The notes below the pieces were generated by a model. That model had not been told where the DNA came from. It made no database searches and was given only the letters and a program-made list of their open reading frames with translations. The position numbers and the translations under genes are program-made. From positions 1-64,000 of the IMG/VR virus record IMGVR_UViG_3300027816_000051: a stretch of 64,000 nucleotides of DNA. One strand, given 5' to 3'. This document shows positions 646 through 16,709 of the stretch, piece after piece (position 1 is the stretch's first letter; the number at the start of each line of letters is the position of its first letter).

Positions 646-646
646 G

Positions 647-3746: not shown

Positions 3747-3748
3747 TG

Positions 3749-3820: not shown

Positions 3821-3826
3821 AATCGG

Positions 3827-3900
3827 AGCCTCCTGTCGGATTCGAACCAACGACCCGCTGATTACAAATCAGCTGCTCTGGCCAACTGAGCTAAGGAGGC
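3827..3900 (-). tRNA. tRNA-Thr(TGT)
   Basis: GCTGA TTTGTAA TCAGC. Confidence 0.95.
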
Positions 3901-3906
3901 AATAGT

Positions 3907-3990
3907 GGGTCAGAGTAGTCACGGCCACCTCTGTTCCTTCTGACCCTTGTCATAACCGTGGCAAGATGTGGCTCGACCCTAATTATGACC
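3907..3990 (-). ncRNA. Candidate two-hairpin RNA with loop-loop complementarity
   Basis: GTCATAA/TTATGAC and GGGTCAGA/TCTGACCC stems; loops carry GCCAC/GTGGC and CACGG/CCGTG complements. Confidence 0.5.
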
Positions 3991-3995
3991 ATTTG

Positions 3996-4067
3996 TTGCG
4001 GGGGTCGGATTCGAACCGACGACCTTTAGGTTATGAGCCTAACGAGCTACCACTGCTCTACCCCACG
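3996..4067 (-). tRNA. Initiator tRNA-fMet(CAT)
   Basis: C1:A72 mismatch (CGTGGGG/CCCCGCA); TTAGG CTCATAA CCTAA. Confidence 0.88.
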
Positions 4068-4068
4068 A

Positions 4069-4085
4069 TATATTTCAAAGAACAA
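4069..4085 (-). promoter_or_regulatory. boxA-like element (variant)
   Basis: TTGTTCTTTGAAATATA immediately 5' of tRNA-fMet. Confidence 0.5.
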
Positions 4086-4123
4086 ATAAAATATAAGAAG
4101 TAAATTCCATATTTCAAAATGTT

Positions 4124-4201
4124 TGGTTGCGGGACCCGGACTCGAACCGGGAACTTCAGCTTATGAGACTGACGAGATGACCACTTTCTACGCATCCCGC
4201 A
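4124..4201 (-). tRNA. Atypical tRNA(CAT), fMet-like with irregular D-arm
   Basis: TGCGGGA/TCCCGCA acceptor, TCAGT CTCATAA GCTGA, CCA encoded; about 3 extra nt before the D-stem. Confidence 0.7.
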
Positions 4202-4206
4202 ATGTT

Positions 4207-4283
4207 TGGTTGGAATAATAGGAATCGAACCTATAACCTTTCGCGTATCAGACGAATGCTCTAACCAATTGAGCTATATTCCA
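4207..4283 (-). tRNA. tRNA-Ile(GAT)
   Basis: TTCGT CTGATAC GCGAA; CCA encoded. Confidence 0.95.
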
Positions 4284-4286
4284 ATT

Positions 4287-4364
4287 TGGGGTAAATAATC
4301 GGATTCGAACCGACGACCTTCTGGACCACAATCAGACGTTCTAACCAACTGAACTATATCTACC
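4287..4364 (-). tRNA. tRNA-His(GTG)
   Basis: Loop TTGTGGT; encoded G-1 opposite C73; CCA encoded. Confidence 0.93.
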
Positions 4365-4372
4365 ATTTATAA

Positions 4373-4423
4373 ATTATAAGGTTCAAACCTTATAATGAAC
4401 CATTATAAGTCTCACACCTTATA
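4373..4423. repeat. Chain of overlapping short inverted repeats around TTATAA
   Basis: ATTATAAGGTTCAAACCTTATAATGAACCATTATAAGTCTCACACCTTATA. Confidence 0.6.
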
Positions 4424-4426
4424 TTG

Positions 4427-4500
4427 AGGTCCCGAGTGGATTCGAACCACCGAATAAGAGTTTTGCAGACTCCCCCCTTAAGCCACTTGGGTACAGGACC
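4427..4500 (-). tRNA. tRNA-Cys(GCA)
   Basis: GGAGT CTGCAAA ACTCT; U73. Confidence 0.93.
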
Positions 4501-4501
4501 G

Positions 4502-4576
4502 TGGTGATTCCTAAAGGACTCGAACCCTTACTTCAACGTCCGTAGCGTTGCGTGCTATCCATTACACCAAAGAACC
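4502..4576 (-). tRNA. tRNA-Arg(ACG)
   Basis: CAACG CTACGGA CGTTG; CCA encoded. Confidence 0.93.
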
Positions 4577-4577
4577 A

Positions 4578-5006
4578 TTACTTAATTCGTTCATCCCATT
4601 CTTCTTGGGTCCCCAATCTAATTGGAACGAACAATGCAAATCCATCATCATCTTCAAAATGGTTACAATCATCCTCTCTCCAACCAAACTTATATCTCAT
4701 GTGTATAAATTTGTTTGTCTCTTGATTCCATCTTGCGATTGTGGTATTTCTATGTTCACCAATATAAATTTGACCATTTACTAAATCTTTTTTAGGAATC
4801 GCACCTGCGTCAATTAGTTTCGGAACATAGAACTCTCTCCATTCTTTTTCATCCACTCTTGGAAGAGTTGGGACATCTTCGGGATTATTAATCTTTGGTA
4901 AATTCTCCCAATGATTCCTAATCATTCTTTCCCTCTCTTCTTTTAGTTTCATTTTCTCCGCTTCAAATTTCATTTTGACGGCGTTGATGTTATCATTTCT
5001 TTCCAT
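4578..5006 (-). CDS. Hypothetical protein
   Basis: Start moved to MERNDNI (5006); upstream part of the track ORF is tRNA-Trp/Val sequence. Confidence 0.8.
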   Translation of the reverse strand: MERNDNINAVKMKFEAEKMKLKEERERMIRNHWENLPKINNPEDVPTLPRVDEKEWREFYVPKLIDAGAIPKKDLVNGQIYIGEHRNTTIARWNQETNKFIHMRYKFGWREDDCNHFEDDDGFALFVPIRLGTQEEWDERIK

Positions 5007-5028
5007 GTCGTTTATTTTTAAAAGTTTG

Positions 5029-5099
5029 CACAGGTGGAGAGATTCGAACTCCCAACAACGGTTTTGGAGACCGGTATGATACCCTTTCACTACACCTGT
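5029..5099 (-). tRNA. tRNA-Trp(CCA)
   Basis: CGGT CTCCAAA ACCG anticodon arm. Confidence 0.93.
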
Positions 5100-5107
5100 G
5101 TATTGTG

Positions 5108-5180
5108 TAGTCCCTGTCGGATTCGAACCGACGACCCTCTGCATGTAAGGCAGACGCTCTCCCAACTGAGCTAAGGAACT
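5108..5180 (-). tRNA. tRNA-Val(TAC)
   Basis: TCTGC CTTACAT GCAGA. Confidence 0.95.
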
Positions 5181-5190
5181 ATGAAAGGAA

Positions 5191-5313
5191 AGAGGAAGAT
5201 GGTTCAGTGGACATCCTCTTTTACGATTGGCGTTACTTCAGGTGAATATCTGCAAACTCCGAATACATCATCCAATATTCACTCTCGAGATATTGATGTA
5301 TCATTCCCCAATC
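5191..5313 (-). ncRNA. Candidate pseudoknot/switch RNA
   Basis: GATTGG/CCAATC closing stem; crossing TACATCA/TGATGTA and GTGAATAT/ATATTCAC stems; trailing GAGGA/TCCTC hairpin. Confidence 0.5.
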
Positions 5314-5321
5314 AACCTTTG

Positions 5322-5395
5322 TGTCCCCGATGCGACTCGAACGCATAACCCCCACATTAAAAGTGTGGTGCTCTAACCAATTGAGCTACGAAGAC
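5322..5395 (-). tRNA. tRNA-Lys(TTT)
   Basis: CCACA CTTTTAA TGTGG. Confidence 0.95.
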
Positions 5396-5400
5396 AAATG

Positions 5401-5473
5401 TGGTACCGACAGGAATTGAACCTGTGACACCCAGATTTTCAGTCTGGTGCTCTACCAACTGAGCTACGGTACC
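5401..5473 (-). tRNA. tRNA-Phe(GAA)
   Basis: CCAGA CTGAAAA TCTGG. Confidence 0.95.
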
Positions 5474-5843: not shown

Positions 5844-5851
5844 TATTTATA
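5844..5851 (+). promoter_or_regulatory. Putative phage late-promoter motif TATTTATA
   Basis: Same octamer precedes many structural genes on either strand. Confidence 0.6.
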
Positions 5852-5887
5852 GTAAACCAAATAAATAAACTAAACTAAATTACAACT

Positions 5888-6142
5888 ATGAACTTCAAAA
5901 AATGGATTATTGACCTTTTCAAAGATGAAAGAGGGTCAACTTCAATCAAACCGGTAATCGCCCTTTTAGGTGCATTATTCCTTTGCGGAACCATGATGGC
6001 AAATTCTTTTACACATGGTGACATTAAACCATCAGAAGAATTGGTAAACGCGGTGATGGTCATTACCGCTATTGGAATGGGTGCAGATACTTTAGATAAG
6101 TTCTCACATAAAAAGAAATCAGACGACGAAGTTTCTGAGTAA
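5888..6142 (+). CDS. Small 2-TM membrane protein (holin-like)
   Basis: Two hydrophobic segments and a charged C-terminus. Confidence 0.6.
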   Translation: MNFKKWIIDLFKDERGSTSIKPVIALLGALFLCGTMMANSFTHGDIKPSEELVNAVMVITAIGMGADTLDKFSHKKKSDDEVSE

Positions 6143-6147
6143 AAATT

Positions 6148-6172
6148 ATGGGGTTAGATAACCCCATTTTTT
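6148..6172 (+). terminator. Intrinsic terminator
   Basis: ATGGGGTT-AGAT-AACCCCAT plus T run. Confidence 0.7.
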
Positions 6173-6179
6173 CTTTTTT

Positions 6180-6677
6180 GTGATGAAGAGACTGCCCATC
6201 ATATTATTATTATTTCTAATATCATTTGGATTTTCGAATCTGAATGCCCAAACTATTGTTGTTGATACGGTAATCAATAACATTAAAATTGGTCCGTTCA
6301 CCGAAAATAAGAATTTGGCTTTCGGTGTTAAAAATATAATTGAAGAAATCATCAATGAACAGGATAGTTTAATTCTGATTACAGATAAAAATAAAGCAGA
6401 CTACAAAATTAAAGTTGAACTCATATTTTTTGACATTGTAACGACTAACTCGGGGGTTAGTATTTTTCACGAAGACAAAACAACCACCGTCATAAGAATG
6501 AAAGGTGTATTGTACAAAGGTGATAAAAAAATTAAACAGGAATTTTCGGAAGGTAAATCAACCGAAATTTCAACCTCAACCATAATGATTGATGAGGGTG
6601 GTAAATTCAATCAACAATCTGCTAGTTCGGCATTAAAGAAAACAACTCAAAACCTAATAAACAAACTAATACTATGA
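6180..6677 (+). CDS. Exported protein, probable CsgG/TolB-N-like fold
   Basis: Sec signal peptide; C-terminal G.S.....KFNQQSASSALKK parallels the CsgG-like protein at 9477. Confidence 0.6.
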   Translation: MMKRLPIILLLFLISFGFSNLNAQTIVVDTVINNIKIGPFTENKNLAFGVKNIIEEIINEQDSLILITDKNKADYKIKVELIFFDIVTTNSGVSIFHEDKTTTVIRMKGVLYKGDKKIKQEFSEGKSTEISTSTIMIDEGGKFNQQSASSALKKTTQNLINKLIL

Positions 6678-8590
6678 AAAAATTATTATTTATCCTAACC
6701 GCGTTAATTTTTACGACGACCGCGTTTTCTCAAACTACGCCACAGATTGGTAATCCTGTTGCGTATAAAACAATCAAAAGGGGTGACACCCTTGATGTTG
6801 TGTTTAAATACACACCAGCATCTTCTGTTGATGTTAGAACTTTCCAAGTTGATTTTCAATATAGAAAACAACTTTTCACTCACGTATCAACAACTGTCGA
6901 CCCAACTGTGAGTACTATGACACCAGCACTTTCGATTAAGTTCTTTAACAACTACAAATACTCAAGCTACAGTTCGGGAACTGGTTTGTACTCATATTCA
7001 ACGGATACAAATTACACTGTGGCAAGAAACTTTTTGGTTTTGTCAAGTGGTTCTCAAATCACCCAAGACACCTTTTTGATTCACAACAAATTTATCATCA
7101 ACGATGTTGAATCGAACTTCGACGCGGACAGTGTTGAAATAAACTGGGCTCGAATGTTCAAATATGACGGTACTACAATAGGTGATAACATTGCAATCTT
7201 AGATGTTCAAGACATGCATCTTGAACTTTTGGGTAACTTGGTTATCAGTGGTGTTGTTGAATTACCGCCAACAATGAAACTAAATGGTAGAAGACCAACA
7301 GTTATATGTACAAAATACAACACAGGTACATTTGTATCATCAGCACTTTGTGACACTGCGGGTTTCTACTCACTTAACAACGTAGATAAAAATACTAAGT
7401 ATAAATTACTTGTAAGATTCCCCGCGGATAGTATGGAAGTTTTCAGAGATTACGCAGTGACAATATCAGACGCGGTAAAAACATATGATGAATATACAGT
7501 AACTGATGTAAACCAAGGATTTGGTCAACAATATTTGAAAAATGGCTTGGCTTATCTAATAGGTGATATGAACCAAAACGGAAAGTTAGATGGTGGTGAC
7601 CCATACTTGATTTATGCAAACGTTAGTGGTATGAAAAAAATTGACACCACAACCATGATTAGAACATTCCACGCTGATGTTTATGATTCATTAGTGTTAG
7701 GTTCAACACAATGGAATGATTGGCCAAATCATTTAACCGCCACCAATTTTATTACTGATAGTGTTGGATTAACTAATAAGACAGTAAACATTAAGTACTT
7801 TATTCAAGGTGATGTTGACAGAACTTACTCATCGAGAGTATGGAACTCATCAGGTGTATTAGTAGCTAAGGCGGTGTTTAAAGGTAAATTAGATGTTGAG
7901 ATACCTAATACCGCATCATCAGGTAATCAACCAATATACGTACCATTTAATGTAAACACTAATGGTGATAATAATTATGGTCTACAGTTTGAAATGAAAT
8001 ATGATAAAAACAAGGTTAAATTTGAAGAAATCATATCTAATTTTAACGGAGGTCCATGGTTACAGTACGTTACACATGACGCAACTGCTGGTACAATTAG
8101 ATTTGGTGGTATGAATAACCAATTTAAAGATGGTTTAATTGGTCAAGCAACACCATTTAAATTAAAATTTTCACCTATTGGAAATAATGATATTGTGAGT
8201 AATATTTACGTTAGACAATTAATGGACGCATCCGATGAAAGAGGTGACCACTTGAATATTGACTTAGTTAGTAGTGTTGCTGTTATTATGTACAAAATGG
8301 CACCACCTATGAATCAAGACATTGATGAAATTACAGCATCAATTCGTCCAAACCCAACTGGTGGTTGGTTTGAATTAGAAGTAAAATTTCCCAACCCAAA
8401 CATGTCAATGAATGTTTCCATCTATGATAATAGAGGTCAACTAATTAAACAAGTTGGTTCTGTTACCACTAACTATATGGAAACAACTGCCTACAAACAA
8501 ATTGATATGAGTTCTGCATCATCAGGTAATTATTATCTGATTTTGAATAATTATAATAAACAATTAACAAGACAATTTATAAAAGTTTAA
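6674..8590 (+). CDS. T9SS type-A-sorted protein with cohesin-like and dockerin-like modules
   Basis: Signal peptide; GDMNQNGKLDGGDPYLI Ca-loop and later QGDVD; GLQFEMKYDKNKVKFEEI...IRFGG cohesin-like; C-terminal IRPNPT...IYDNRGQLI...GNYYLIL...QFIKV sorting domain. Confidence 0.8.
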   Translation: MKKLLFILTALIFTTTAFSQTTPQIGNPVAYKTIKRGDTLDVVFKYTPASSVDVRTFQVDFQYRKQLFTHVSTTVDPTVSTMTPALSIKFFNNYKYSSYSSGTGLYSYSTDTNYTVARNFLVLSSGSQITQDTFLIHNKFIINDVESNFDADSVEINWARMFKYDGTTIGDNIAILDVQDMHLELLGNLVISGVVELPPTMKLNGRRPTVICTKYNTGTFVSSALCDTAGFYSLNNVDKNTKYKLLVRFPADSMEVFRDYAVTISDAVKTYDEYTVTDVNQGFGQQYLKNGLAYLIGDMNQNGKLDGGDPYLIYANVSGMKKIDTTTMIRTFHADVYDSLVLGSTQWNDWPNHLTATNFITDSVGLTNKTVNIKYFIQGDVDRTYSSRVWNSSGVLVAKAVFKGKLDVEIPNTASSGNQPIYVPFNVNTNGDNNYGLQFEMKYDKNKVKFEEIISNFNGGPWLQYVTHDATAGTIRFGGMNNQFKDGLIGQATPFKLKFSPIGNNDIVSNIYVRQLMDASDERGDHLNIDLVSSVAVIMYKMAPPMNQDIDEITASIRPNPTGGWFELEVKFPNPNMSMNVSIYDNRGQLIKQVGSVTTNYMETTAYKQIDMSSASSGNYYLILNNYNKQLTRQFIKV

Positions 8591-8594
8591 AACT

Positions 8595-8933
8595 ATGAGC
8601 GACGAAACAAACGTACCAGAATCTGACGGAACATGGTCAGGCCTTAAGAAAACATTAATCGGAACTATTTCAACCGCAATTTTAGCTGGTGGTACATGGT
8701 TTACTACTACTCTTATGGGTGGTGGTGAAGAAAAAAATGAACCCACACCAACTCAACAATCGGCACCTGTTATTAATTTAAATGTAGATAATTCTTCTAA
8801 GAACACATCATCAAGTGGTGGGGGAAATACTACAATTATAAAAGAAAGAGTGGTTGAAAAACCATCCAAATCAGAACCTTCTAAACCTAAAAAAGAAGGT
8901 GATGAATTTAAAGAAAAAGAACCACAATGGTAA
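8595..8933 (+). CDS. Membrane-anchored low-complexity protein
   Basis: One N-terminal hydrophobic segment; Ser/Pro/Lys/Glu-rich tail. Confidence 0.75.
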   Translation: MSDETNVPESDGTWSGLKKTLIGTISTAILAGGTWFTTTLMGGGEEKNEPTPTQQSAPVINLNVDNSSKNTSSSGGGNTTIIKERVVEKPSKSEPSKPKKEGDEFKEKEPQW

Positions 8934-9475
8934 ATAATCAACCAACCGGATTTAAAGACCTTCTTAATTCAATGATGAAAAGAAGGTGGTTTATTACCGC
9001 GATTGTTTTAGGTGGATTTATGTTTATTATGGCTGGAATATTTGCCGCCATAATTGGTAAAAATGAAATAGGTGGAGAATGGAAAGAACTTCTTCTTTTA
9101 CTTCTTGGTGCTTTCATTGGTTCTTATGGTAAAATCATTGACTATTGGTTCAGTGATACCGATAAAGATAAAATGTTAGTACAAAAAATGGATGAGGAAG
9201 ATGGTACATCTTTGTCAAACACCGCCGATATGAAAACACCAATCAATCAAAGTTTAGATGAATCTACCCCTCAAGTCACTCCTCAAGTCACCCCCCAAGT
9301 TGGTGTGGAAATAGACGAAGATGGTGATGGTGTAATGGATGGTTTAGATTTTGATAATGATGGTATCATAGATGAATATTTTGAACATCGTCAATGTGAG
9401 CACGTTTGGGGCGACCAAGATAATGACGGTGATTTAGAATGTTTGAAATGTGGTAAGATTAAAGACCCTGAGTAA
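8927..9475 (+). CDS. 2-TM membrane protein with DxDxDG Ca-binding-like repeats and Cys/His motif
   Basis: Two TM segments; DEDGDG, DFDNDG, DQDNDG; CEH...CLKC. Confidence 0.75.
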   Translation: MVNNQPTGFKDLLNSMMKRRWFITAIVLGGFMFIMAGIFAAIIGKNEIGGEWKELLLLLLGAFIGSYGKIIDYWFSDTDKDKMLVQKMDEEDGTSLSNTADMKTPINQSLDESTPQVTPQVTPQVGVEIDEDGDGVMDGLDFDNDGIIDEYFEHRQCEHVWGDQDNDGDLECLKCGKIKDPE

Positions 9476-9476
9476 T

Positions 9477-10235
9477 ATGAAAAATTTCTTATTTAAGAAA
9501 ATTTTATCTCCAATTGTTTTAGTAATACTATGGTTTTTGGCGATGTTACTATTTGCTAATACGGTAAGTGCTCAAGTTGTGGGTAAGACACAAACAGAAC
9601 AATATAAAGCGTCTTTTGAAACAAATGTGTCTATAGATTCTCTTATGGATTATGATGGCCCTCAAATCCCAATACAAATTTTGAAAATTGGTATTAGTGA
9701 TGAGGTGTATGAACAATATCCCGAACTAAAAGAAAAAAAAGTTGGTTTGGGTGTTGCCAATATTACACTTGAATATTTGGAGAATTTAAATAGATTCACA
9801 TTTACCGAAGACAAAACTGAAATCAAAAATCGTATGGTGAAACAATACCAAGCATCTCAAGCCGGTATTAGTTATGACACATTAAATGGTAGAGGTAAGA
9901 TAAGATTGGCACATTATTTTGTGACAATTGAAGTTTATGAATTTTCAGTGAGTGAGGATGAAACCGTAAATCTTAGTAATGGTGTTAAAAATACCGTTGT
10001 AACTAGATTAGGTTTACAGGTTAGATTTACAGACGCAGAAACCGGTCAAATAATCGCCGCAAGTGGTTTAGGTGAAGCGGTAACAGTAAGAGAACTCAGT
10101 CTTTTGAATGATGATAATTTAAGTGAAGTGAAGTTTAATCAATCAACAATAGGTATTAGTACAAAAAAAGCATTAGATATTGCTTGTTCAAGAATTCTAT
10201 TAAGAATGATAAAAAAGGGTGTATTCCCAAAATAA
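9477..10235 (+). CDS. CsgG-family (curli assembly/transport-like) protein
   Basis: Signal peptide; GLGVANITLEYLENLNRFTFTE, VTIEVYEF, LGLQVRFTDAETGQIIAASG pattern typical of the CsgG/TolB-N family; start set at MKNFLFK. Confidence 0.7.
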   Translation: MKNFLFKKILSPIVLVILWFLAMLLFANTVSAQVVGKTQTEQYKASFETNVSIDSLMDYDGPQIPIQILKIGISDEVYEQYPELKEKKVGLGVANITLEYLENLNRFTFTEDKTEIKNRMVKQYQASQAGISYDTLNGRGKIRLAHYFVTIEVYEFSVSEDETVNLSNGVKNTVVTRLGLQVRFTDAETGQIIAASGLGEAVTVRELSLLNDDNLSEVKFNQSTIGISTKKALDIACSRILLRMIKKGVFPK

Positions 10236-10256
10236 CTTCATAATGTTTAAAAGTTA

Positions 10257-10284
10257 ATAAAAGGGGGGTTAAACCCCCTTTTTA
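10257..10284. terminator. Probable bidirectional terminator hairpin
   Basis: A-run, G-run/C-run hairpin, T-run. Confidence 0.6.
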
Positions 10285-10286
10285 AT

Positions 10287-12083
10287 ATGGTTATGAATTT
10301 TAAAACGTTAATATTAAGTTTTTTTCTTATTTTCGTATGTAACATATCGAAAGCACAGGTATCAACATATACCTTTATCGACCCTTGTACAAAAGAGGTA
10401 ACTATGTTTAGTGTACCAATACAGGGTGGTAAAACAATGATTATTTTTTTAGATAATGTTGGTTACTTTGATGCTAATGATTTGTCAAATGGTAATTTTT
10501 CAAATTGGGTAAATCAGGTTTACACAAAATACAGACAGACCAATCCCTGTTCACAACAACAAGGTCAGGTAATTCAAAATCAGATAACCGCACAAATAAT
10601 TGGAGGTACGATTCAGTCAGTTGTTAGTTCTATTTTGTCAAGCAGTCAATCACAATCAACAAGTTTAGAAAGTGGTTCGTCAAGTAGTGATGCTGGTGGA
10701 AAAGACAATAAAAATTCTGAAAAAAAGAAAAATAATAATTCATCCCAAACAAATGGAAATAATTCATCTCAATCAAATACAACGAGTACTACTTCAACTC
10801 AAACTGGAGGACAATCCCAAACGAATTCAGGAACTAATAACTCAAATGGAGGAAGTGGTTCAACATCAGGAAATGGGAATACAACGAATGGTGGAGGGAC
10901 ATCAGGTTCAGGTAACACAACTCAAGGTGGAAATTCAACGACTCAACCGTCTGTAGGAACAAACACGTCTACTAACAACAATTCAGGTTCAACCAATAGT
11001 GGTGGTTCTGGTGGTACTAACAATAGTTCGTCTAATAATACGAACACAACAACCGGTAACAATGGAACATCTACAAATACTTCGGGTGGTTCAACAACTA
11101 ATACAAACGGTTCGGCAACCACAAGTGGTAGTGGTGGTAGTAATACCAACAATTCAAATAGTGGAGGTTCTAATACAAACGGTTCTAATGGTAATACCAC
11201 AGGTGGTTCTACAAATGGTAATAGTGGGGGTTCTAATGGTGGTACCACTAGTGGTACAAATACAACAGGTGGAAGCGGTTCAAGTAATACTAATAACACC
11301 AACACAAATAATCAAAAGGGTGAGGAAGTTGGTGCCACAACACAAATGAATAATGATGCACACAATGATAATAATGCGGGTGGAGGTTCTAATAGTGGTG
11401 GTAAAGGTAAATCAGGGGGTAGTGGTAGTGCGAGGTCAAACCCTATAATAGTTTCTTCTGATATTACCTCAGCACAAAACTTGAATAGAACATTTACACC
11501 TATTGTTAATATAGGTACAAGTAAATCGTCAATGACGGGTTTATCAAGTTATGGTGTTACTGGTATGGTATGGTTAAACTTTAAACAGTTTGCTGTTTCG
11601 GCTAAATACACTAAAATACATTACAGTAAATCAAAAAAATTAAAATTCATACATAATTTAAATTTAACGGGTGTATATACTTACGGAAACTACTTGGGTT
11701 TTGTTGGTTATAGTGGGATTTTAAATGGTGGAAAATACGGTGTAACAGGTTTTAATATAAGTGGTGCAGCCACGATAATATCAGAAGAAAAAAGTGGTTA
11801 TTATTCACCATCAATTACCGCTTTTTATACAAGACCAATTAAGGTTAGTAAAAAAATGATAGTTAGTCCTGAATTATATGTTATTTCTACACCATTGGTT
11901 TATTCAACCAAAGACAAAGTATCAATAAGTGATAGATACGTGAGTGGGTTTATTGGGACGGGTATTGATTATCAAATATCAAAAAGATTTAAGTTAAATG
12001 TCAACTATAAAGCAAATATGAGTACAAATCCGGAATTTCCGATTTTGTCATTCTTTTTAATTGGTAGTAAGATAAATTTATGA
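10287..12083 (+). CDS. Exported protein with long S/T/N/G-rich linker and probable C-terminal beta-barrel
   Basis: Signal peptide; about 260 aa of low complexity; C-terminal alternating amphipathic strands ending GSKINL. Confidence 0.7.
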   Translation: MVMNFKTLILSFFLIFVCNISKAQVSTYTFIDPCTKEVTMFSVPIQGGKTMIIFLDNVGYFDANDLSNGNFSNWVNQVYTKYRQTNPCSQQQGQVIQNQITAQIIGGTIQSVVSSILSSSQSQSTSLESGSSSSDAGGKDNKNSEKKKNNNSSQTNGNNSSQSNTTSTTSTQTGGQSQTNSGTNNSNGGSGSTSGNGNTTNGGGTSGSGNTTQGGNSTTQPSVGTNTSTNNNSGSTNSGGSGGTNNSSSNNTNTTTGNNGTSTNTSGGSTTNTNGSATTSGSGGSNTNNSNSGGSNTNGSNGNTTGGSTNGNSGGSNGGTTSGTNTTGGSGSSNTNNTNTNNQKGEEVGATTQMNNDAHNDNNAGGGSNSGGKGKSGGSGSARSNPIIVSSDITSAQNLNRTFTPIVNIGTSKSSMTGLSSYGVTGMVWLNFKQFAVSAKYTKIHYSKSKKLKFIHNLNLTGVYTYGNYLGFVGYSGILNGGKYGVTGFNISGAATIISEEKSGYYSPSITAFYTRPIKVSKKMIVSPELYVISTPLVYSTKDKVSISDRYVSGFIGTGIDYQISKRFKLNVNYKANMSTNPEFPILSFFLIGSKINL

Positions 12084-14365
12084 GAAATGTACTATTTTTT
12101 ATATTGTTTTTGTTGTTACCTGTCTTAGCTTTTTCACAAGCAACAACAATGTCATTGGGTACAAGTAGTACGGGTGTGGTATCATCTACTTACAATACAT
12201 GGACCAAGGTTGACCCTAATTTAACAATTACAGCAAATGGGACAATAAATGGATTTAGAGTTCAAATATCTCAAACGTACACAAGTGGCGACCAATTGAG
12301 GTCAACATCAACTTTACCAACAGGTGTGAGTGCTTCTTTTAATACTACCACAGGTATATTAGTATTTTCGGGCACAGCAAGTGCAAGTGATTGGCAAACA
12401 GTATTGAGAGGTGTTGAATTTAAATCAACAACATCAACTTGTTACCCACTACAAAGGAGAGTCACATTTGTTGCTGGTTTAGTTTTTTACAACCCATTAA
12501 CTGAACATTTTTATGAATATGTTTCATCATCAGGTTCATGGACAACCGCAAAAACTAATTCTGAGTTAAGGTCTTATTTTGGTAGAGCCGGTTATTTAGC
12601 GACCATGTCTTCTGAAGCTGAAAATAATTTTATTTGGAAATTAATGTCATCAGATGGTTGGTTTGGGGCGTCGGATGAGATGAGTCAGGTTAATACCGCT
12701 AAGGGTTCTACCGTTTATACTTCACAAGCGGCGGTAGAACAAAAATGGCATTGGGTGTCAGGTCCTGAGAAGGGGACACAGTTTTCTAACGGTAGTACCG
12801 CGGTAACGGGTCAATACTCAAAATGGGCTGGTGGTGAACCAAATAATGCGGGTGGTGAACATTATGCACAATTTTATTCCGCGAACAGTGGACAATGGAA
12901 TGATTTACCTAACACTAACTTACCCGGTTATATTTGTGAATATGGAGACATGCCAAACGACCAAACATCAAGTATCACAATATTAACAAGGAATGTTGAA
13001 ATCAGTAACGCTTCAAGTGGTTACATAAGTGGTGGTAACATAAATGTTTGTTCGGGTAGTAACAGCACAACTTTAACGTTAAATGGGTATACAGGTAGTA
13101 TTGTTAGATGGGAATCTTCTTTTGATAACTTTTTTACCGCAGCAACCACAATATCGAGTACATCTTCAAGTATAACAGTAACCAACTTAACTAAAACCAC
13201 ATACTACAGAGCGGTAATAAATTCAACAAGTCCTGTGAGTTGTACAGGTTTAGTAACATCAAGTGTTTATCTGTCTGTAAAACCAACAAAATCAGGTTCA
13301 GTATTTGCGGTAAATAATAGTATATGTGCGGGAGGGCAATCCGAATTAACATTATCTGGTCAACAAGGTAATGTAAATAAATGGCAACGCTCAACTAATG
13401 GAACAACATGGACCGATATATCAAATACAACCACAAGTCTTACCGAAACAATTAGTAGCGCCGGAACTTATTATTATAGGGTAGAAGTTCAAACTCCAAA
13501 TTGTGGTAGTGCGGTCTTTTCTGATTCTAAAATAATCACAGTTACATCGGGAACACCTCCTGTTGGTGGTTCTATATCTTCATCAACACATACTTCTACA
13601 ACAAACTCAGGAACACTTACACTAAGTAGTTACACGGGTACAATTGTTAAATGGCAACGTTCAACAAATGATGGTGTAACATGGACTGACATTGTAAACA
13701 CATCGACAACTTATTCATACACAAATATAACCGTCAAAACATTGTTCAGAGCTCAATTACAAAGTGGTACTTGTGGTTTCGCTTATAGTTCATCAGGTTC
13801 TGTAACGATTATAACTGAAACAATAATCGGTACAATTACGATACCTACAGGTTTATCGGTAAGACCACAAGTAAAATTATATTTGGTTGAAAATGGTGTT
13901 GAGACACTGTTACAAACTGTCACGGTTGGTACAACAGGTACTTACACTTTAAACCCAACAAAATATAACTCAACTTATAAAATAGTTCCTTCGTTTTCAT
14001 CATCATTAACGTCCGCAGATTTTGATAATGTTTTTAATGAGTCACAAAACGAAAATACACCGAGTTTATTACAACCCGGTGTAGTATTGAATAATGGCCC
14101 GAAAATGAAAGCTGGCGATATTAATAAAGATGGTAAGGTAACAATATCGGATGCGTACTTATTAGGTGCTAATTTAACAAGTATGATAACATTTGATGAG
14201 GTTTATTGGTACACCGCGAATGATTTTAATTCGTTAACAATATCAAACTTCAATACAGTCACTCCATCAAATAATTTCTCAATAAATTTTACAAATACAT
14301 CAGTTACTTTTAACATCAAGTATATTGTAAAAGGAGATGCTAACTTATCTTCTTCGTCTTATTGA
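12080..14365 (+). CDS. C-type lectin / Ig-like repeat / dockerin-like adhesin
   Basis: Signal peptide; GYLAT..SEAENNFI..W.G.SD..W.W..G..Y.KWAGGEPNN..E....WND..YICEY C-type lectin; three ICxG..LTLxG..G....WQ repeats; GDINKDGKVTISDAYLL...KGDAN dockerin-like end. Confidence 0.85.
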   Translation: MRNVLFFILFLLLPVLAFSQATTMSLGTSSTGVVSSTYNTWTKVDPNLTITANGTINGFRVQISQTYTSGDQLRSTSTLPTGVSASFNTTTGILVFSGTASASDWQTVLRGVEFKSTTSTCYPLQRRVTFVAGLVFYNPLTEHFYEYVSSSGSWTTAKTNSELRSYFGRAGYLATMSSEAENNFIWKLMSSDGWFGASDEMSQVNTAKGSTVYTSQAAVEQKWHWVSGPEKGTQFSNGSTAVTGQYSKWAGGEPNNAGGEHYAQFYSANSGQWNDLPNTNLPGYICEYGDMPNDQTSSITILTRNVEISNASSGYISGGNINVCSGSNSTTLTLNGYTGSIVRWESSFDNFFTAATTISSTSSSITVTNLTKTTYYRAVINSTSPVSCTGLVTSSVYLSVKPTKSGSVFAVNNSICAGGQSELTLSGQQGNVNKWQRSTNGTTWTDISNTTTSLTETISSAGTYYYRVEVQTPNCGSAVFSDSKIITVTSGTPPVGGSISSSTHTSTTNSGTLTLSSYTGTIVKWQRSTNDGVTWTDIVNTSTTYSYTNITVKTLFRAQLQSGTCGFAYSSSGSVTIITETIIGTITIPTGLSVRPQVKLYLVENGVETLLQTVTVGTTGTYTLNPTKYNSTYKIVPSFSSSLTSADFDNVFNESQNENTPSLLQPGVVLNNGPKMKAGDINKDGKVTISDAYLLGANLTSMITFDEVYWYTANDFNSLTISNFNTVTPSNNFSINFTNTSVTFNIKYIVKGDANLSSSSY

Positions 14366-14786: not shown

Positions 14787-15197
14787 TTATACAGTATGTT
14801 CAATCTGAACCCGTACACAATTTTGTGGTAATCTATGGATGTGTCTGTAATTGTTGATGTAACCCATCATATTGGCACTACCAATCGCGTTAGCTGAATG
14901 TATAACAACATCAACAACTGGTTTACCATCCAACCATTGTTCCACTAACCACTTGGTACAATCCATACCTGTTTTTTCTTTGATGTTGTTGTAGTCTAAT
15001 TCGTAATTATGATAAACATTACGATGCCATTCAGCCATTGCGGTATCACCTAAATCATGGTCAAGAGAAATTAAACTAATATTCTCCAATCCAATTTCTG
15101 ATACTTTCTCAACAAACTCCTCATATGTTCGAACAATGACCCATTCGTCCTTTAGTACTGGTGTTCTAACGTCATCTAAATAAATTCTTTTTTTCAT
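14787..15197 (-). CDS. Cyclic-phosphate-processing receiver-domain protein
   Basis: IYLDDVRTP, ISLDHDLG, TGMDCTKWL and IHSANAIG motifs; adjacent to RNA ligase and kinase. Confidence 0.8.
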   Translation of the reverse strand: MKKRIYLDDVRTPVLKDEWVIVRTYEEFVEKVSEIGLENISLISLDHDLGDTAMAEWHRNVYHNYELDYNNIKEKTGMDCTKWLVEQWLDGKPVVDVVIHSANAIGSANMMGYINNYRHIHRLPQNCVRVQIEHTV

Positions 15198-15213
15198 TGT
15201 ATGATTTTTCTTA

Positions 15214-16299
15214 CTAATTCTCTTCATCTTTTTTAAATGGTTTTGAATATGGTGGATATAATATTTTCCATATTATATTTTTATATGATTTACCATCCAA
15301 CATATTAAACAGTATTGAAGGGTGGGAATATCTTTTAGCTAATTCAGCAAACTCCGCTCGGGTAAATTCTTTTTGGTATGATTCAAAATAAACGTTACGA
15401 ATTTTGTTGAATATCCATTTATATTCCTTTTCGATATTTTCAAATCGAATCACAAAGTCCTTTACCGTTTCTTTCACCCAACTATTAAATTCATCTGGTA
15501 CCTTCTCAAGTAACTCATCAAATGGTTTATCTTCTTTAAGATATTCCCAAATATCTCTACTTGACACATTAGTTAGTATTCTATGTAAACGAACATACTC
15601 TTCGAATTTTATTTTCATTCTAAAGTTCGATGGGTAGAAACGAATAACAAACCCTTCACTATTTGGGGTGTTTAGTTTTTTATAGTTGTCAAATGTTTCC
15701 TTGTTGAAGGTTACCATAGTGCTATCGACAATATCTTTCTCTTCAATATCCGATGAATGAAAAATTGCTCGAGCGGTGTGCCAGTTTAATTCTCCTATGG
15801 GTGTTGTTACAGATAAAAAGGTAATCTTATCACAACCATAGTTCACTACTATCCTATTTTCGGGATAAATAATTTCACATAAATAGGTAACTTCCTTCAT
15901 GAATTTACTTAAATCATATTTTGATTTAAGAATTTCTAAACCACGAATGGATTGTTCCGAGGTAAAAGAACCTCTTGTTGACATAATCCATTCACCATCA
16001 TAAAAGAAAAGGATTCCAAGAGAACCATCCATTTTATCTTGGATGTGAGTATACTCACTATCCCAAGGAATTAAATTTTTATCAATAACCTCTTCGTAGT
16101 TGAAAAATTTACCAAATGGTTTTGATATTACTTCTCCTGAATGGGTTGTAATAAGACCACGACATTGCATAGTAATATCATCCCACAAAGATTCATATTG
16201 TACTCTTGGTGTGTAATTCCATATGTACAAATCTTTGGTTGGGTGAGTTTGTTTCATTAACAAACCATCCTTATGATATCTCTCTAAAACTTCAATCAC
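15214..16299 (-). CDS. rnlA: T4 Rnl1-like RNA ligase
   Basis: QCRGLI, KPFGKFFNYEE, motif I DKMDGSLG, TYLCEII, EGFVIRF, MKIKFEEY. Confidence 0.92.
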   Translation of the reverse strand: MIEVLERYHKDGLLMKQTHPTKDLYIWNYTPRVQYESLWDDITMQCRGLITTHSGEVISKPFGKFFNYEEVIDKNLIPWDSEYTHIQDKMDGSLGILFFYDGEWIMSTRGSFTSEQSIRGLEILKSKYDLSKFMKEVTYLCEIIYPENRIVVNYGCDKITFLSVTTPIGELNWHTARAIFHSSDIEEKDIVDSTMVTFNKETFDNYKKLNTPNSEGFVIRFYPSNFRMKIKFEEYVRLHRILTNVSSRDIWEYLKEDKPFDELLEKVPDEFNSWVKETVKDFVIRFENIEKEYKWIFNKIRNVYFESYQKEFTRAEFAELAKRYSHPSILFNMLDGKSYKNIIWKILYPPYSKPFKKDEEN

Positions 16300-16709
16300 A
16301 ACTTAATTTCAAAACGATTTTTCATAATCTCTAATTTGTCTTCAGGAACTCCATGTATGTTCTCACCACCGTGTCTGTTTTCAACCACAATAGTGTGAAC
16401 TCTGTAACCATATCTTTTAGCCATTTCAAAATATGGCTCCATTTCCCATTCTTGTGTAAAAGTGTTTGAAACAACAACCCTAACAACACTATTCATCATT
16501 AAATTGGCACATCTTTGTTGACAATCATTATGTGCTTCCCTTAATTTTGTTGGGTCGAAATTATAATTACCCTCTTTATCTGTAAAGTAATCGTCCGCAG
16601 ACAATGGTTTCAACGGGTTATTTGGAGTGTATAAAATTATCTCCCCTAAAGTAGATTTACCCGAACCAGGTAACCCTCTCACTAAAATCAAATCTTTTGT
16701 ATATTCCAT
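16296..16709 (-). CDS. Stand-alone polynucleotide kinase (P-loop, AAA_33-like)
   Basis: LVRGLPGSGKST Walker A; SADDYF; VSNTFTQEWE; HGVP; no HAD phosphatase domain. Confidence 0.85.
   Translation of the reverse strand: MEYTKDLILVRGLPGSGKSTLGEIILYTPNNPLKPLSADDYFTDKEGNYNFDPTKLREAHNDCQQRCANLMMNSVVRVVVSNTFTQEWEMEPYFEMAKRYGYRVHTIVVENRHGGENIHGVPEDKLEIMKNRFEIKL

What the first reader, a model, noticed from the sequence alone, without database searches (positions are those of the whole stretch)
5844..14365. Phage-encoded cell-surface assembly cassette (CsgG-like pores, T9SS scaffold, cohesin-dockerin lectin)
Seen: eight co-oriented, tightly coupled genes behind a late-type TATTTATA motif. Five products have Sec signal peptides and three are membrane proteins: two CsgG-like proteins, a cohesin/dockerin protein with a T9SS signal, a dockerin-tipped C-type lectin, and a low-complexity/beta-barrel protein. 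These are host-envelope proteins, not virion parts. Inference: the phage builds a modular surface complex on the infected Bacteroidota cell (adhesion or aggregation of new hosts, glycan capture, receptor masking or grazer evasion). I know of no described phage system with this architecture.
Basis: partly seen in the sequence, partly recalled or inferred. Interest (0 to 1): 0.85.

Follow-up and report, generated by a model that had tools for sequence, protein, structure and literature searches.

The report
Phage cassette of host-envelope proteins
A giant freshwater phage of Flavobacterium-like bacteria carries a conserved block of eight genes for exported and membrane proteins (a sugar-binding lectin, a surface-anchored docking protein, an outer-membrane barrel and two curli-pore-like proteins); these most likely re-dress the surface of the infected cell rather than build the virus particle.

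Summary
Window 5844-14365 carries eight co-oriented genes behind a promoter-like TATTTATA. Five products have Sec signal peptides that obey the Bacteroidetes Q-rule, and three are small inner-membrane proteins.

What profile and structure searches support:
- g3 is a T9SS type-A cargo with a cohesin-like domain.
- g8 is a canonical C-type lectin with an invariant EPN...WND calcium/sugar site.
- g7 ends in a confidently modelled outer-membrane beta-barrel of about 12 strands, behind about 300 low-complexity residues.
- g2 and g6 have the CsgG/LpoB/LptE fold.

What is over-read:
- "Pores": g2 and g6 have no lipobox and no membrane hairpins.
- "Dockerin": only weak, non-canonical matches.

The phage belongs to the bS21-encoding jumbo phages of Bacteroidota. 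The module is syntenic in more than 100 independent contigs. A reduced form sits in the cultured Flavobacterium phage immuto, so this is not an assembly chimera.

Best reading: a late-expressed module that uses the host's Sec, BAM and T9SS pathways to place a glycan-binding complex, plus a barrel with CsgG-fold partners, in the infected cell's envelope. The function (adhesion or host capture, versus receptor masking) is inferred, not shown.

Single pieces have precedents: pelagimyophage CsgGF, Cryophage T9SS cargo, and Q-rule proteins in P. gingivalis phages. I found no description of the combined cassette. Verdict: new variant of a known kind, interest about 0.62.

The parts
5844..5851 (+). 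TATTTATA promoter-like motif, 36 nt upstream of g1
   Evidence: 12 of its 17 copies in the window lie 4-38 nt before a same-strand start, including terminase and portal. It is conserved before the module in relatives.
5888..6142 (+). g1: 84-aa small membrane protein with two hydrophobic stretches and a charged C-tail (holin-like topology)
   Evidence: Only a faint TIGR01598 holin match (E 0.06). In other lineages a g1-like gene sits directly upstream of g6.
6148..6167 (+). Hairpin plus T run (terminator-like) after g1
   Evidence: A hairpin is also present at this position in close relatives.
6180..6677 (+). g2: 165-aa secreted small protein with the LpoB/LptE/CsgG-clan fold; probable start ATG 6183
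   Evidence: Signal peptide with Q-rule. hhalign against the g6 family gives probability 81%, E 1.2e-5. The Atlas model of its viral cluster matches LpoB/CsgG/LptE models at TM 0.72-0.78. No Pfam hit.
6674..8590 (+). g3: 638-aa secreted T9SS type-A cargo with an internal dockerin-like module (about residues 295-392), a cohesin-like domain (about 405-550) and a C-terminal sorting domain (559-636)
   Evidence: Por_Secre_tail scores 34.2 bits (cut-off 27) and TIGR04183 scores 27.6 bits (cut-off 23). The CTD is found in 19/24 homologues and Cohesin in 9/24 (best E 5e-10). The family profile hits PDB T9SS CTDs 5jvk, 8glk_D and 8glj_D.
8595..8933 (+). g4: 112-aa bitopic inner-membrane protein (N-in) with a periplasmic Q/P/K/E-rich tail ending in an invariant Trp
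   Evidence: Alignment A7. It precedes g6 in nearly all relatives, including phage immuto gp016.
8927..9475 (+). g5: 182-aa membrane protein with two spans; its first 100 residues are nearly invariant; variable Pro-rich linker; acidic DxDxDG repeats; Cys/His knuckle
   Evidence: Alignment A6. The Atlas finds only viral clusters. g5 is absent from immuto and some MAG-binned relatives.
9450..10235 (+). g6: 261-aa secreted divergent CsgG/LpoB-superfamily protein, the most conserved gene of the module; probable start ATG 9477
   Evidence: AlphaFold2 pLDDT 71.5. Foldseek top hits are CsgG 4uv2 (E 3.7e-6), GNA1162, FlgT, PelC and LptE. The family profile reaches proteins that pass the Pfam CsgG cut-off. 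Atlas score 0.94 to CsgG/LpoB clusters. No lipobox; hairpin tip 67% polar.
10259..10282 (.). Strong G6/C6 hairpin flanked by A and T runs, directly before the g7 start (terminator or attenuator-like)
   Evidence: Conserved in relatives that keep g7 next to g6.
10287..12083 (+). g7: 598-aa protein with a signal peptide, a conserved N-domain (FxDPC motif), about 300 residues of S/T/N/G low complexity, and a C-terminal outer-membrane beta-barrel
   Evidence: AlphaFold2 of the last 215 residues: pLDDT 86.6, all beta. Foldseek hits PcoB, NanC, KdgM, FapF, intimin and autotransporter beta-domains. Spacer length varies, giving 417-598 aa in homologues. No Pfam, NCBIfam or PDB sequence hit.
12080..14365 (+). 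g8: 761-aa secreted C-type lectin (CTLD about residues 135-290, EPN/WND site) with three Ig-like repeats, a beta-sandwich and a C-terminal dockerin-like module; no T9SS sorting domain
   Evidence: Lectin_C in 33/37 homologues (best E 9e-7). The family profile hits CEL-I (5e-10), mannose-binding proteins and langerin. E253, P254, N255, E260, W273, N274 and D275 are invariant. No CTD in any of 37 homologues and none by a cassette-derived CTD HMM.

Best explanation
This is a conserved phage module, probably expressed late, whose products go into the envelope of the infected Flavobacterium-type cell by the host's own pathways.

Proposed steps:
1. Five proteins cross the inner membrane by Sec and are cut by signal peptidase I at a Gln (the Bacteroidetes Q-rule).
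2. g3 is then exported and surface-anchored by the host T9SS through its type-A C-terminal sorting domain. It exposes a cohesin-like domain.
3. g8, a calcium-dependent C-type lectin of the mannose-type (EPN) class, has no sorting domain. It is proposed to ride on or dock to g3 through the dockerin-like module that both proteins carry.
4. g7 is inserted in the outer membrane as a small barrel with a long S/T/N/G-rich spacer.
5. The two CsgG/LpoB-fold proteins (g6, g2) sit in the periplasm, probably as rings or adaptors under that barrel. The small inner-membrane proteins g4 (and g5, g1 where present) tether or regulate them.

Net effect (my commitment): shortly before and after lysis, the infected cell and its debris become coated with a glycan-binding complex. 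This complex sticks to mannose-type sugars on neighbouring cells or particles and keeps susceptible hosts near the burst ('host capture').

Shown from sequence: gene order, export signals, domain and fold assignments, conservation, phage origin.
Inferred: timing, localisation, g3-g8 docking, g6/g2/g7 assembly, and the biological effect.

On the confidence value: I put about 0.8 on the general layer (an exported envelope module, not virion parts) and about 0.4 on the whole statement including adhesion or host capture as the effect. The 0.4 is the value given.
For: Phage context:
- Terminase, portal, capsid, DNA polymerase, RnlA and Lon-like protease; 23 tRNAs.
- A bS21 gene at 28096-28296. This places the phage among the Bacteroidetes-infecting bS21 jumbo phages of PMC9723584.

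Not a chimera:
- The same module lies between the same flanking genes in dozens of independent contigs.
- G+C of about 0.34 matches the rest of the window.
- A reduced module (lectin, cohesin+CTD, g4, g6, g7, g2 homologues) is in the cultured Flavobacterium phage immuto.

Export:
- Signal peptides with the Q-rule are kept across homologues, and in this window they are confined to the cassette. The Q-rule is described in PMC5837995.
- The T9SS CTD is above curated cut-offs.
- g7 is an outer-membrane barrel.

Lectin: invariant EPN...WND site and profile hits to solved C-type lectins.

CsgG-clan fold of g6 and g2.

Coupling of g3 and g8:
- Both carry a homologous dockerin-like module.
- Within-genome identity is 31-40%, against 16-22% between orthologues of the two main clades.
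- In immuto the architecture is split into two dockerin-like-tipped proteins plus one cohesin+CTD protein.

Faster divergence of g2, g3 and g8 (40-50% identity) than of g5 and g6 (75-85%) in the same genomes fits adaptation to variable surface glycans.

Promoter motif shared with structural genes.
Against: - No expression, localisation or binding data exist for any of these proteins.
- The dockerin match is below thresholds and the module is non-canonical, with one clear calcium loop and an insert of about 60 residues.
- The cohesin match of the window protein itself is only 15.5 bits against a cut-off of 24.1.
- g8 has no known route across the outer membrane.
- One lineage (L047/L049) has lost g2, g3, g4, g7 and g8 and keeps only g1, the membrane part of g5, and g6. 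So g6 has a role that does not need the lectin, the cohesin protein or the barrel.
- Related modules also hold a class-3 lipase and a TonB-dependent-receptor-like protein. This suggests the locus may be a collection point for several envelope functions rather than one machine.
- 'Late' is not measured.
Confidence: 0.4

Rival explanations
1. The envelope assembly is the same, but its purpose is masking rather than adhesion. The lectin complex binds the infected cell's own surface glycans, which are the phage receptor or its surroundings. This blocks superinfection, or stops progeny from being wasted on debris after lysis.
For: - The export and lectin evidence is the same as for the best explanation.
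- PMC9723584 reports many LPS and polysaccharide genes in these phages and reads them as surface remodelling against superinfection.
- Fast divergence of g3 and g8 fits tracking of host-specific glycans.
- Late expression would suit protection of progeny.
Against: - Classical superinfection exclusion genes are expressed early (established for T4 imm/sp; my own knowledge), whereas this module shares its motif with structural genes.
- A multi-domain lectin held about 500 residues away from its anchor looks built to reach outward rather than to cover its own membrane. This is inference.
Confidence: 0.22
2. The module is a nutrient-capture auxiliary function. It tethers glycans or particles at the surface, like a small cellulosome or Sus accessory, to feed the host during a long jumbo-phage infection.
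For: - Related modules contain a SusC-like TonB-dependent receptor and a lipase.
- The only earlier report of phage T9SS cargo involved glycoside hydrolases (PMC7468147).
- Cohesin and dockerin are the cellulosome building blocks (established knowledge).
Against: - No catalytic domain was detected in any of the eight window proteins.
- The TonB-dependent receptor and the lipase are absent from this window and from immuto.
Confidence: 0.12
3. It is a lysis or lysis-timing device. g1 and g5 act as holin or pinholin, g4 as an inner-membrane spanin-like tether, and g6/g7 as an outer-membrane breach. This parallels the gated-pore idea proposed for the CsgGF of phage Melnitz.
For: - g1 and g5 have holin-like size and topology.
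- The minimal variant keeps g1, g5N and g6.
- The Melnitz authors proposed a lysis-timing role for phage CsgG (PMC9004378).
- Late-type motif.
Against: - No endolysin adjoins the module. The immuto endolysin gave no match anywhere in the window, and in immuto it lies about 8 kb from the module.
- There is no lipoprotein o-spanin, because no lipobox is present.
- A 761-aa lectin and a T9SS-anchored cohesin protein have no place in lysis.
- Immuto has the module without g1 or g5.
- g6 shows no membrane hairpins.
Confidence: 0.1
4. g3, g8 and their partners are virion fibres or decorations, or the block is host DNA joined to the phage by mis-assembly.
For: - Lectin, Ig-like and beta-sandwich domains are common in phage fibres and decorations (PMC7824862).
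Against: - Cleavable Sec/Q-rule signal peptides, a T9SS sorting domain and an outer-membrane barrel are incompatible with assembly of virions in the cytoplasm.
- No PHROG structural hits.
- The module lies between a tRNA array and RNA-repair genes, not in the tail block.
- The same junctions recur in more than 100 contigs from many samples and in an isolated phage genome.
- In 185,579 species genomes it occurs only on six MAG contigs, and each of those carries the phage module.
Confidence: 0.03

Closest known systems
Partial curli (CsgG/CsgF) operon of pelagimyophages (HTVC008M group) and Methylophilales phage Melnitz (PMC7029224, PMC9004378)
   Same: Both are T4-like myophages that carry CsgG-family genes of unknown role in a variable region. 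The authors speculated about host aggregation ('sibling capture') or lysis timing. Among predicted viral structures, the only significant match to the g6 model is a phage protein annotated as CsgG.
   Different: Those genes are recognisable CsgG and CsgF, close to proteobacterial curli genes. Here g6 and g2 miss the Pfam CsgG model directly and lack a lipobox and membrane hairpins. No CsgF was detected in the cassette (no Pfam or NCBIfam hit). They come with a lectin, a T9SS cargo and a separate barrel, and the host is Bacteroidota.
Phage-encoded T9SS cargo of 'Cryophage' (PMC7468147)
   Same: A phage gene product with a type-A T9SS sorting domain, variable between phage variants, presumed to be displayed or secreted by the host's T9SS.
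   Different: Cryophage cargos are an endoglucanase, a GH39 glycoside hydrolase and a PA14-domain protein, as single variable genes. Here the cargo is a non-enzymatic cohesin-like protein inside a conserved multi-gene module.
Q-rule signal-peptide proteins of Porphyromonas gingivalis phages (PMC10367356)
   Same: Phage proteins of unknown function adapted to the Bacteroidota Sec/signal peptidase I/glutaminyl cyclase route.
   Different: Those are scattered genes in temperate phages with no domain assignment. Here five such proteins are clustered and have assignable folds.
Cohesin-dockerin assemblies (cellulosomes and non-cellulosomal cohesin/dockerin-like modules; established knowledge)
   Same: An anchor protein with a cohesin, plus other secreted proteins ending in a calcium-loop module. 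The immuto split into cohesin+anchor and two module-tipped proteins mirrors the scaffoldin/subunit logic.
   Different: The dockerin-like module is not the canonical duplicated 22-residue segment. Anchoring is by a T9SS CTD rather than by sortase or SLH. No enzymes are present, and binding is untested.
Outer-membrane barrel plus CsgG/LptE-clan partner pairs (LptD/LptE, PelB/PelC, CsgG itself; established knowledge; fold hits)
   Same: A periplasmic or lipoprotein partner of this fold clan works with, or forms, an outer-membrane channel. PelC and LptE are among the Foldseek hits of g6.
   Different: The g7 barrel is small (about 12 strands). g6 and g2 are not lipoproteins. No substrate or export function is identified.

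Membership tests
CsgG curli secretion channel (type VIII secretion; Pfam PF03783) | Sequence or fold membership in the CsgG/LpoB/TolB_N-like superfamily | tested here: met
   g6: Foldseek top hit CsgG 4uv2, E 3.7e-6. The A1 profile retrieves P0076, P0065, P0126 and P0146, which pass the Pfam CsgG cut-off. Atlas score 0.94. g2: hhalign to g6 gives probability 81%, and its cluster model matches LpoB/CsgG/LptE models at TM 0.72-0.78. Direct Pfam scans of g2 and g6 give no hit.
CsgG curli secretion channel (type VIII secretion; Pfam PF03783) | N-terminal lipobox Cys (outer-membrane lipoprotein) | tested here: not met
   The signal peptides end in A-Q / S-Q signal peptidase I sites. There is no Cys at or near the cleavage site in any of 18 g6 or 25 g2 homologues.
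CsgG curli secretion channel (type VIII secretion; Pfam PF03783) | Two amphipathic beta-hairpins that form the 36-stranded transmembrane barrel | tested here: inconclusive
   The monomer model has three long strands (156-175, 178-195, 201-217). However, the distal hairpin 166-186 is 67% polar or charged, with invariant S168, D170 and E171. No oligomer model could be run.
CsgG curli secretion channel (type VIII secretion; Pfam PF03783) | Partner genes csgF/csgE and amyloid subunits csgA/csgB | tested here: not met
   No Pfam or NCBIfam curli family hits in any cassette protein.
T9SS type-A cargo | C-terminal sorting domain (PF18962 / TIGR04183) at the extreme C-terminus | tested here: met
   g3 residues 559-636 of 638 score 34.2 bits (cut-off 27) and 27.6 bits (cut-off 23). 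The domain is found in 19/24 homologues. The family profile hits solved CTDs.
T9SS type-A cargo | N-terminal Sec signal peptide | tested here: met
   Heuristic only, since no SignalP was available: basic n-region, hydrophobic core and S-Q site in 22/24 homologues.
T9SS type-A cargo | T9SS-dependent secretion in a host that has the system | not testable with these tools
   The host is inferred to be Flavobacterium or another Bacteroidota. That these bacteria have a T9SS is established knowledge.
Cohesin-dockerin pair | Cohesin domain (PF00963) | tested here: inconclusive
   The window g3 scores 15.5 bits against a cut-off of 24.1. 9/24 homologues hit at E<=0.01, best 5e-10. Immuto gp015 is annotated as cohesin. 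The N-terminal domain of g3 is not detectably cohesin-like (hhalign probability 3.5%).
Cohesin-dockerin pair | Dockerin: duplicated calcium-binding loop-helix segments (PF00404) | tested here: not met
   Only one loop matches, at E 0.016 in g8. 4/37 g8 homologues and 2/24 g3 homologues hit at E<=0.01. The module has an insert of about 60 residues and a second GD(V/A)(D/N) loop. It is dockerin-like, not a canonical dockerin.
Cohesin-dockerin pair | Calcium-dependent binding of the two modules | not testable with these tools
   Indirect hints only: the split architecture in immuto and higher within-genome than between-clade identity of the g3 and g8 modules.
C-type lectin domain (PF00059) | Domain-level homology | tested here: met
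   The window g8 scores 18.6 bits against a cut-off of 22.6. 33/37 homologues hit, best E 9e-7. The family profile hits CEL-I at 5e-10, plus mannose-binding proteins, SP-D and langerin.
C-type lectin domain (PF00059) | Calcium site 2 / sugar-binding motif (EPN or QPD, plus WND) | tested here: met
   E253-P254-N255, E260 and W273-N274-D275 are invariant in 37 homologues. They align to the same motif in CEL-I. That EPN marks the mannose-type class is established knowledge.
Autotransporter / FapF-type 12-stranded secretion barrel | C-terminal outer-membrane beta-barrel of about 12 strands | tested here: met
   Model pLDDT 86.6 with 12-14 strands. Foldseek hits PcoB, NanC, KdgM, FapF, intimin, EspP and BrkA barrels at TM 0.4-0.54.
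Autotransporter / FapF-type 12-stranded secretion barrel | Family-specific sequence model, and a helical linker or plug inside the barrel | tested here: not met
   No Pfam, NCBIfam or PDB sequence hit. No helix precedes the first strand in the model. The fold hits do not discriminate among small barrels.
Holin-endolysin-spanin lysis cassette | Adjacent endolysin and a lipoprotein o-spanin | tested here: not met
   No muramidase or amidase hit in the cassette. The immuto endolysin has no match in the window. No lipobox in any product.

The most novel reading that the evidence does not exclude
The conserved core (g4, g6, g7, with g2) is a previously unknown, phage-borne trans-envelope export and anchoring device. 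A ring of CsgG-fold subunits without lipid anchors is coupled to a small outer-membrane barrel and tethered to the inner membrane. The device carries the sorting-domain-less lectin g8 (or g7's own 300-residue spacer) to the cell surface, independently of or alongside the host T9SS.
Probability: 0.12. Interest if true: 0.88.

Novelty: new variant of a known kind. Interest (0 to 1): 0.62.

Why it matters
These bS21 jumbo phages are abundant and transcriptionally active in freshwater lakes, and they infect Bacteroidota that turn over polysaccharides and particles.

A conserved phage module that makes infected cells glycan-sticky, or masks their glycans, would change how we think about phage spread in dilute waters. 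It would do the same for particle aggregation and carbon flux, and for the still unexplained CsgG genes of marine myophages.

It would also show a phage using three host envelope pathways at once (Sec/Q-rule, BAM and T9SS). It offers a compact cohesin/dockerin-like surface-display system in Bacteroidota.

A reduced version exists in a cultured phage-host pair, Flavobacterium phage immuto on Flavobacterium sp. LMO8. The question is therefore directly testable.

Tried and rejected
- Megablast of the cassette against GenBank phages: no match.
- PHROGs on the eight proteins: only two marginal, meaningless hits.
- PDB sequence searches with the g6, g2 and g7-barrel profiles: nothing.
- Atlas search with g5: only viral clusters, no family.
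- A word-indexed homologue search with the g7 barrel was saturated by close, unnamed metagenomic relatives and added only the family size of 1109 proteins.
- PHROGs on other genes that carry the TATTTATA motif gave no annotation. The 'late' label therefore rests on terminase, portal and the scaffold-like gene.
- Two cohesins in g3: rejected. hhalign of the N-domain against the cohesin region gives probability 3.5%.
- Cellular operon analogy: contig L141 carries a kinase, a CsgG-like gene, a putative barrel, a second CsgG-like gene and a small barrel. I could not tie its neighbours to g7 or g2 by hhalign. It stays an unverified resemblance.
- Supplementary tables of PMC9723584 were searched for the cassette's domains and for this contig. 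Nothing was found, but the stored file is truncated.
- Virion-part and chimera readings were rejected for the reasons given under rival explanations.

Full report
**What is there.** Window 5844-14365 holds eight + strand ORFs: g1 5888-6142 (84 aa), g2 6180-6677 (165 aa), g3 6674-8590 (638 aa), g4 8595-8933 (112 aa), g5 8927-9475 (182 aa), g6 9450-10235 (261 aa), g7 10287-12083 (598 aa) and g8 12080-14365 (761 aa). Four junctions overlap and one is 4 nt. Two gaps carry G+C-rich hairpins with T runs, at 6148-6167 and 10259-10282. This suggests three expression sub-blocks: g1; g2-g6; g7-g8. The Atlas records point to probable true starts at 6183 for g2 and 9477 for g6.

**Promoter-like motif.** TATTTATA sits 36 nt before the g1 start. 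It occurs 17 times in the window, and 12 copies lie 4-38 nt upstream of a same-strand gene start (binomial P about 1e-15). These include terminase, portal and the acidic scaffold-like gene before the capsid gene. The motif is also found before the first gene of the module in diverged relatives, and before g7 where g7 has been moved away. Calling it 'late' is an inference from these structural genes and from its likeness to the T4 late promoter TATAAATA (my own knowledge).

**Whose DNA it is.**
- The window is the start of a 288-kb IMG/VR contig.
- It encodes T4-like terminase, portal, major capsid protein, DNA polymerase, an RnlA-type RNA ligase and a Lon-like protease.
- It carries 23 tRNAs.
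- It has a ribosomal protein bS21 gene on the reverse strand between portal and capsid genes (28096-28296; Pfam E 6e-11).

This matches the bS21-encoding jumbo phages described by Chen et al. (PMC9723584). Those are 293-331 kb, 31-34% G+C, carry 5-25 tRNAs and live in freshwater lakes. Their hosts are predicted to be Bacteroidetes, with one CRISPR spacer from a Flavobacterium. That paper does not mention the cassette. It notes many LPS and polysaccharide genes and reads them as surface remodelling.

**Not a chimera; widely conserved.** g6 has 551 confirmed relatives in IMG/VR and g8 has 64. tblastn of all cassette and flanking proteins against 136 fetched loci shows the same order, g2-g3-g4-g5-g6-g7-g8, between the tRNA array and the RNA-repair/Lon genes in the close relatives. 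The module order is kept in more distant ones.

Divergence within the same genomes is uneven. g5 and g6 stay at 75-85% identity where g2, g3 and g8 fall to 40-50%.

Variants:
- g8 moved in front of g4, and g7 displaced by about 6 kb (loci L053-L078).
- A g1-like gene directly upstream of g6 (L066, L071, L075, L079, L055).
- A deletion variant that keeps only g1, the membrane part of g5, and g6 (L047/L049).

Among 185,579 species genomes, only six MAG contigs match. All six carry the module, and they are mostly binned with Sediminibacterium, Flavobacterium or 'Bacteroidetes'. G+C across the cassette equals that of the rest of the window.

A cultured relative exists. Flavobacterium phage vB_FspM_immuto (160 kb, host Flavobacterium sp. 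LMO8) has:
- gp013, 'lectin C-type';
- gp014, the g3 N-part ending in the dockerin-like module;
- gp015, 'cohesin' plus the sorting domain;
- gp016 (g4), gp017 (g6, 57% identity), gp018 (g7) and gp019 (g2).

It has no g1 or g5 there. I found no paper that discusses these genes.

**Export signals.** g2, g3, g6, g7 and g8 start with a basic n-region and a hydrophobic core, followed by a small residue and then Gln (A|Q or S|Q). This is the Bacteroidetes 'Q-rule' for signal peptidase I substrates (PMC5837995). The pattern is kept in 20/25, 22/24, 17/18, 42/43 and 37/38 diverse homologues. A six-frame scan of the 64-kb window with the same heuristic returns only cassette genes. No product has a lipobox cysteine.

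The three small membrane proteins:
- g1 has two hydrophobic stretches and a charged tail.
- g4 has one N-in span, then a Q/P/K/E-rich tail ending in an invariant Trp.
- g5 has two spans. Its first 100 residues are almost invariant across the family. They are followed by a variable Pro-rich linker, DxDxDG-type acidic repeats and a Cys/His knuckle.

**Domain and fold checks.**

*g3.* The type-A T9SS sorting domain at residues 559-636 of 638 is above the curated cut-offs of Pfam and NCBIfam. It is present in 19/24 homologues and aligns to solved sorting domains. A cassette-derived HMM finds no second sorting domain in the window. The cohesin match is weak in the window protein but reaches E 5e-10 in homologues (9/24).

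*g8.* The C-type lectin match is sub-threshold in the window protein but present in 33/37 homologues. The family profile hits CEL-I (5e-10), mannose-binding proteins, SP-D and langerin. The calcium/sugar-site residues EPN, E and WND are invariant. By established knowledge this marks the mannose/GlcNAc/fucose-type class. The rest of g8 is three Ig-like repeats (the Ig_7 'CHU_C-associated' family in some homologues), a beta-sandwich and a C-terminal dockerin-like module. No sorting domain appears in any of 37 homologues.

*g7.* The last 215 residues fold with pLDDT 86.6 into an all-beta structure of 12-14 strands. Its best PDB matches are small outer-membrane barrels: PcoB, NanC, KdgM, FapF, and intimin and autotransporter beta-domains. 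Before the barrel come a conserved N-domain and an S/T/N/G-rich spacer of variable length, giving 417-598 aa in homologues.

*g6.* The model (pLDDT 71.5) matches CsgG in its pre-pore form (E 3.7e-6), GNA1162, FlgT, PelC and LptE. Among viral models it matches only a phage protein annotated as CsgG. The g6 profile, run against 1.84 billion representatives, reaches proteins that pass Pfam's CsgG cut-off. Some of these are fused to caspase or kinase domains.

*g2.* It is a distant paralogue of g6 (hhalign probability 81%). The model of its viral cluster matches LpoB/CsgG/LptE models at TM 0.72-0.78.

The 'CsgG-like' call is therefore right at superfamily level. 'Pore' is not supported. There is no lipid anchor, and the distal hairpin of g6 is two-thirds polar with invariant acidic residues. 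No CsgF, CsgE, CsgA or CsgB is present.

**Link between g3 and g8.** Both carry a homologous module of about 90 residues. It has a calcium-loop-like G-D-x-N-x-N/D-G segment, an insert of about 60 residues, and a second G-D-V/A-D/N loop. It matches Dockerin_1 only weakly, so it is dockerin-like and not canonical.

Two indirect observations favour a functional link:
- In immuto the architecture is split into two module-tipped secreted proteins (the lectin gp013 and gp014) and one cohesin+sorting-domain protein (gp015). This is the subunit/scaffoldin logic.
- The g3 and g8 modules are 31-40% identical within a genome. Orthologous modules of the window-type and L100-type clades are only 16-22% identical. 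This hints at concerted evolution, as expected if both must fit one co-evolving partner.

Neither observation proves binding.

**Most likely mechanism.**
- Shown: a phage-borne, conserved cluster of exported and membrane proteins adapted to Bacteroidota export rules.
- Inferred: g3 is displayed by the host T9SS. The lectin g8 docks to it. g7 is inserted by BAM as a small barrel with a long spacer. g6 and g2 act as periplasmic rings or adaptors, tethered by g4 (and g5, g1).

I commit to a glycan-binding coat that makes the infected cell and its debris adhere to neighbouring cells or particles. This is a 'host capture' device, akin to the 'sibling capture' idea raised for pelagimyophage curli genes (PMC7029224). 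I put about 0.8 on the general layer (an exported envelope module, not virion parts) and about 0.4 on the full statement including this effect.

Rival readings are receptor masking or superinfection exclusion, nutrient capture, and lysis control.
- Nutrient capture is suggested by the lipase and the TonB-dependent-receptor-like genes in the same locus of other lineages.
- Lysis control is suggested by the holin-like g1 and g5, the minimal variant, and the Melnitz proposal.

The minimal variant shows that g6 has a role of its own. The locus may combine more than one function.

**Comparison and novelty.** Published precedents exist for each ingredient:
- phage CsgG/CsgF (PMC7029224, PMC9004378);
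- phage T9SS cargo, described as a 'unique occurrence' in Cryophage (PMC7468147);
- Q-rule proteins in P. gingivalis phages (PMC10367356);
- lectin domains on jumbo-phage virions (PMC7824862).

I found no description of this combined cassette, nor of a cohesin/dockerin-like lectin display encoded by a phage. It is best filed as a new variant of a known kind: phage-encoded remodelling of the host surface through host secretion pathways. A small chance remains that the g4-g6-g7 core is a new export device.

**Limits.**
- Signal peptides and membrane spans were judged by heuristics.
- No multimer prediction was possible.
- No expression or proteomic data were accessible.
- 'Late' timing, localisation, docking and function remain inference.

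Noticed in passing
window 28096-28296 (-): A ribosomal protein bS21 gene lies on the reverse strand between the portal/scaffold and capsid genes (Pfam Ribosomal_S21, E 6e-11). It identifies the phage as one of the bS21-encoding Bacteroidetes jumbo phages of PMC9723584.
   Followed up: yes
window 573-5473 (-): An array of 23 tRNA genes covering 19 amino acids lies directly upstream of the cassette on the opposite strand, with small ORFs interspersed. It includes three tRNA-Met(cat) and a tRNA-Ile(tat).
   Followed up: partly
window 14787-16709 (-): An RNA-repair cluster is convergent with the cassette: a cREC_REC cyclic-phosphate-processing receiver domain protein (14787-15227), an RnlA-type RNA ligase (15214-16299) and an AAA_33 kinase-like protein (16296-16709). 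A Lon-like protease follows at 16902-18920. This is probably a tRNA-repair system next to the tRNA array.
   Followed up: partly
L055 10718-16351 (also L053, L057, L060, L062): In one lineage, five extra genes lie between g6 and g7. They include a class-3 lipase (E 4e-31) and an 827-aa TonB-dependent-receptor/SusC-like outer-membrane protein (CarboxypepD_reg + Plug + barrel). This is a phage-encoded TonB-dependent receptor in the same envelope locus.
   Followed up: partly
L049 8953-10771 (and L047): A deletion variant of the module keeps only g1, an 83-aa membrane part of g5, and an intact g6, with small remnants of g2 and g3. g6 therefore seems to have a function independent of the lectin, the cohesin protein and the barrel.
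   Followed up: partly
P0101, P0103, P0110 (loci L138-L140); P0126, P0146: Cellular proteins reached by the g6 profile fuse the CsgG-like domain to a caspase (Peptidase_C14) domain or to a Ser/Thr kinase. On the high-G+C contig L141 a CsgG-like gene sits between a kinase and two putative barrel proteins. These envelope systems had no functional annotation in the tools used here (only Pfam domain hits).
   Followed up: partly
window 9266-9300: A 12-nt tandem repeat (2.9 copies) encodes the TPQV repeats in the variable Pro-rich linker of g5. Linker length differs widely among homologues.
   Followed up: no
L143, L148: Short contigs carrying the phage module are binned in MAGs labelled Thiobacillus and Micavibrio. 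This is likely mis-binning of phage DNA and is not evidence about the host.
   Followed up: no
L137 17365-17925 (phage immuto gp236): The immuto endolysin has an N-terminal hydrophobic segment (signal-anchor-like). This suggests holin-independent export. No homologue is present in this 64-kb window.
   Followed up: no
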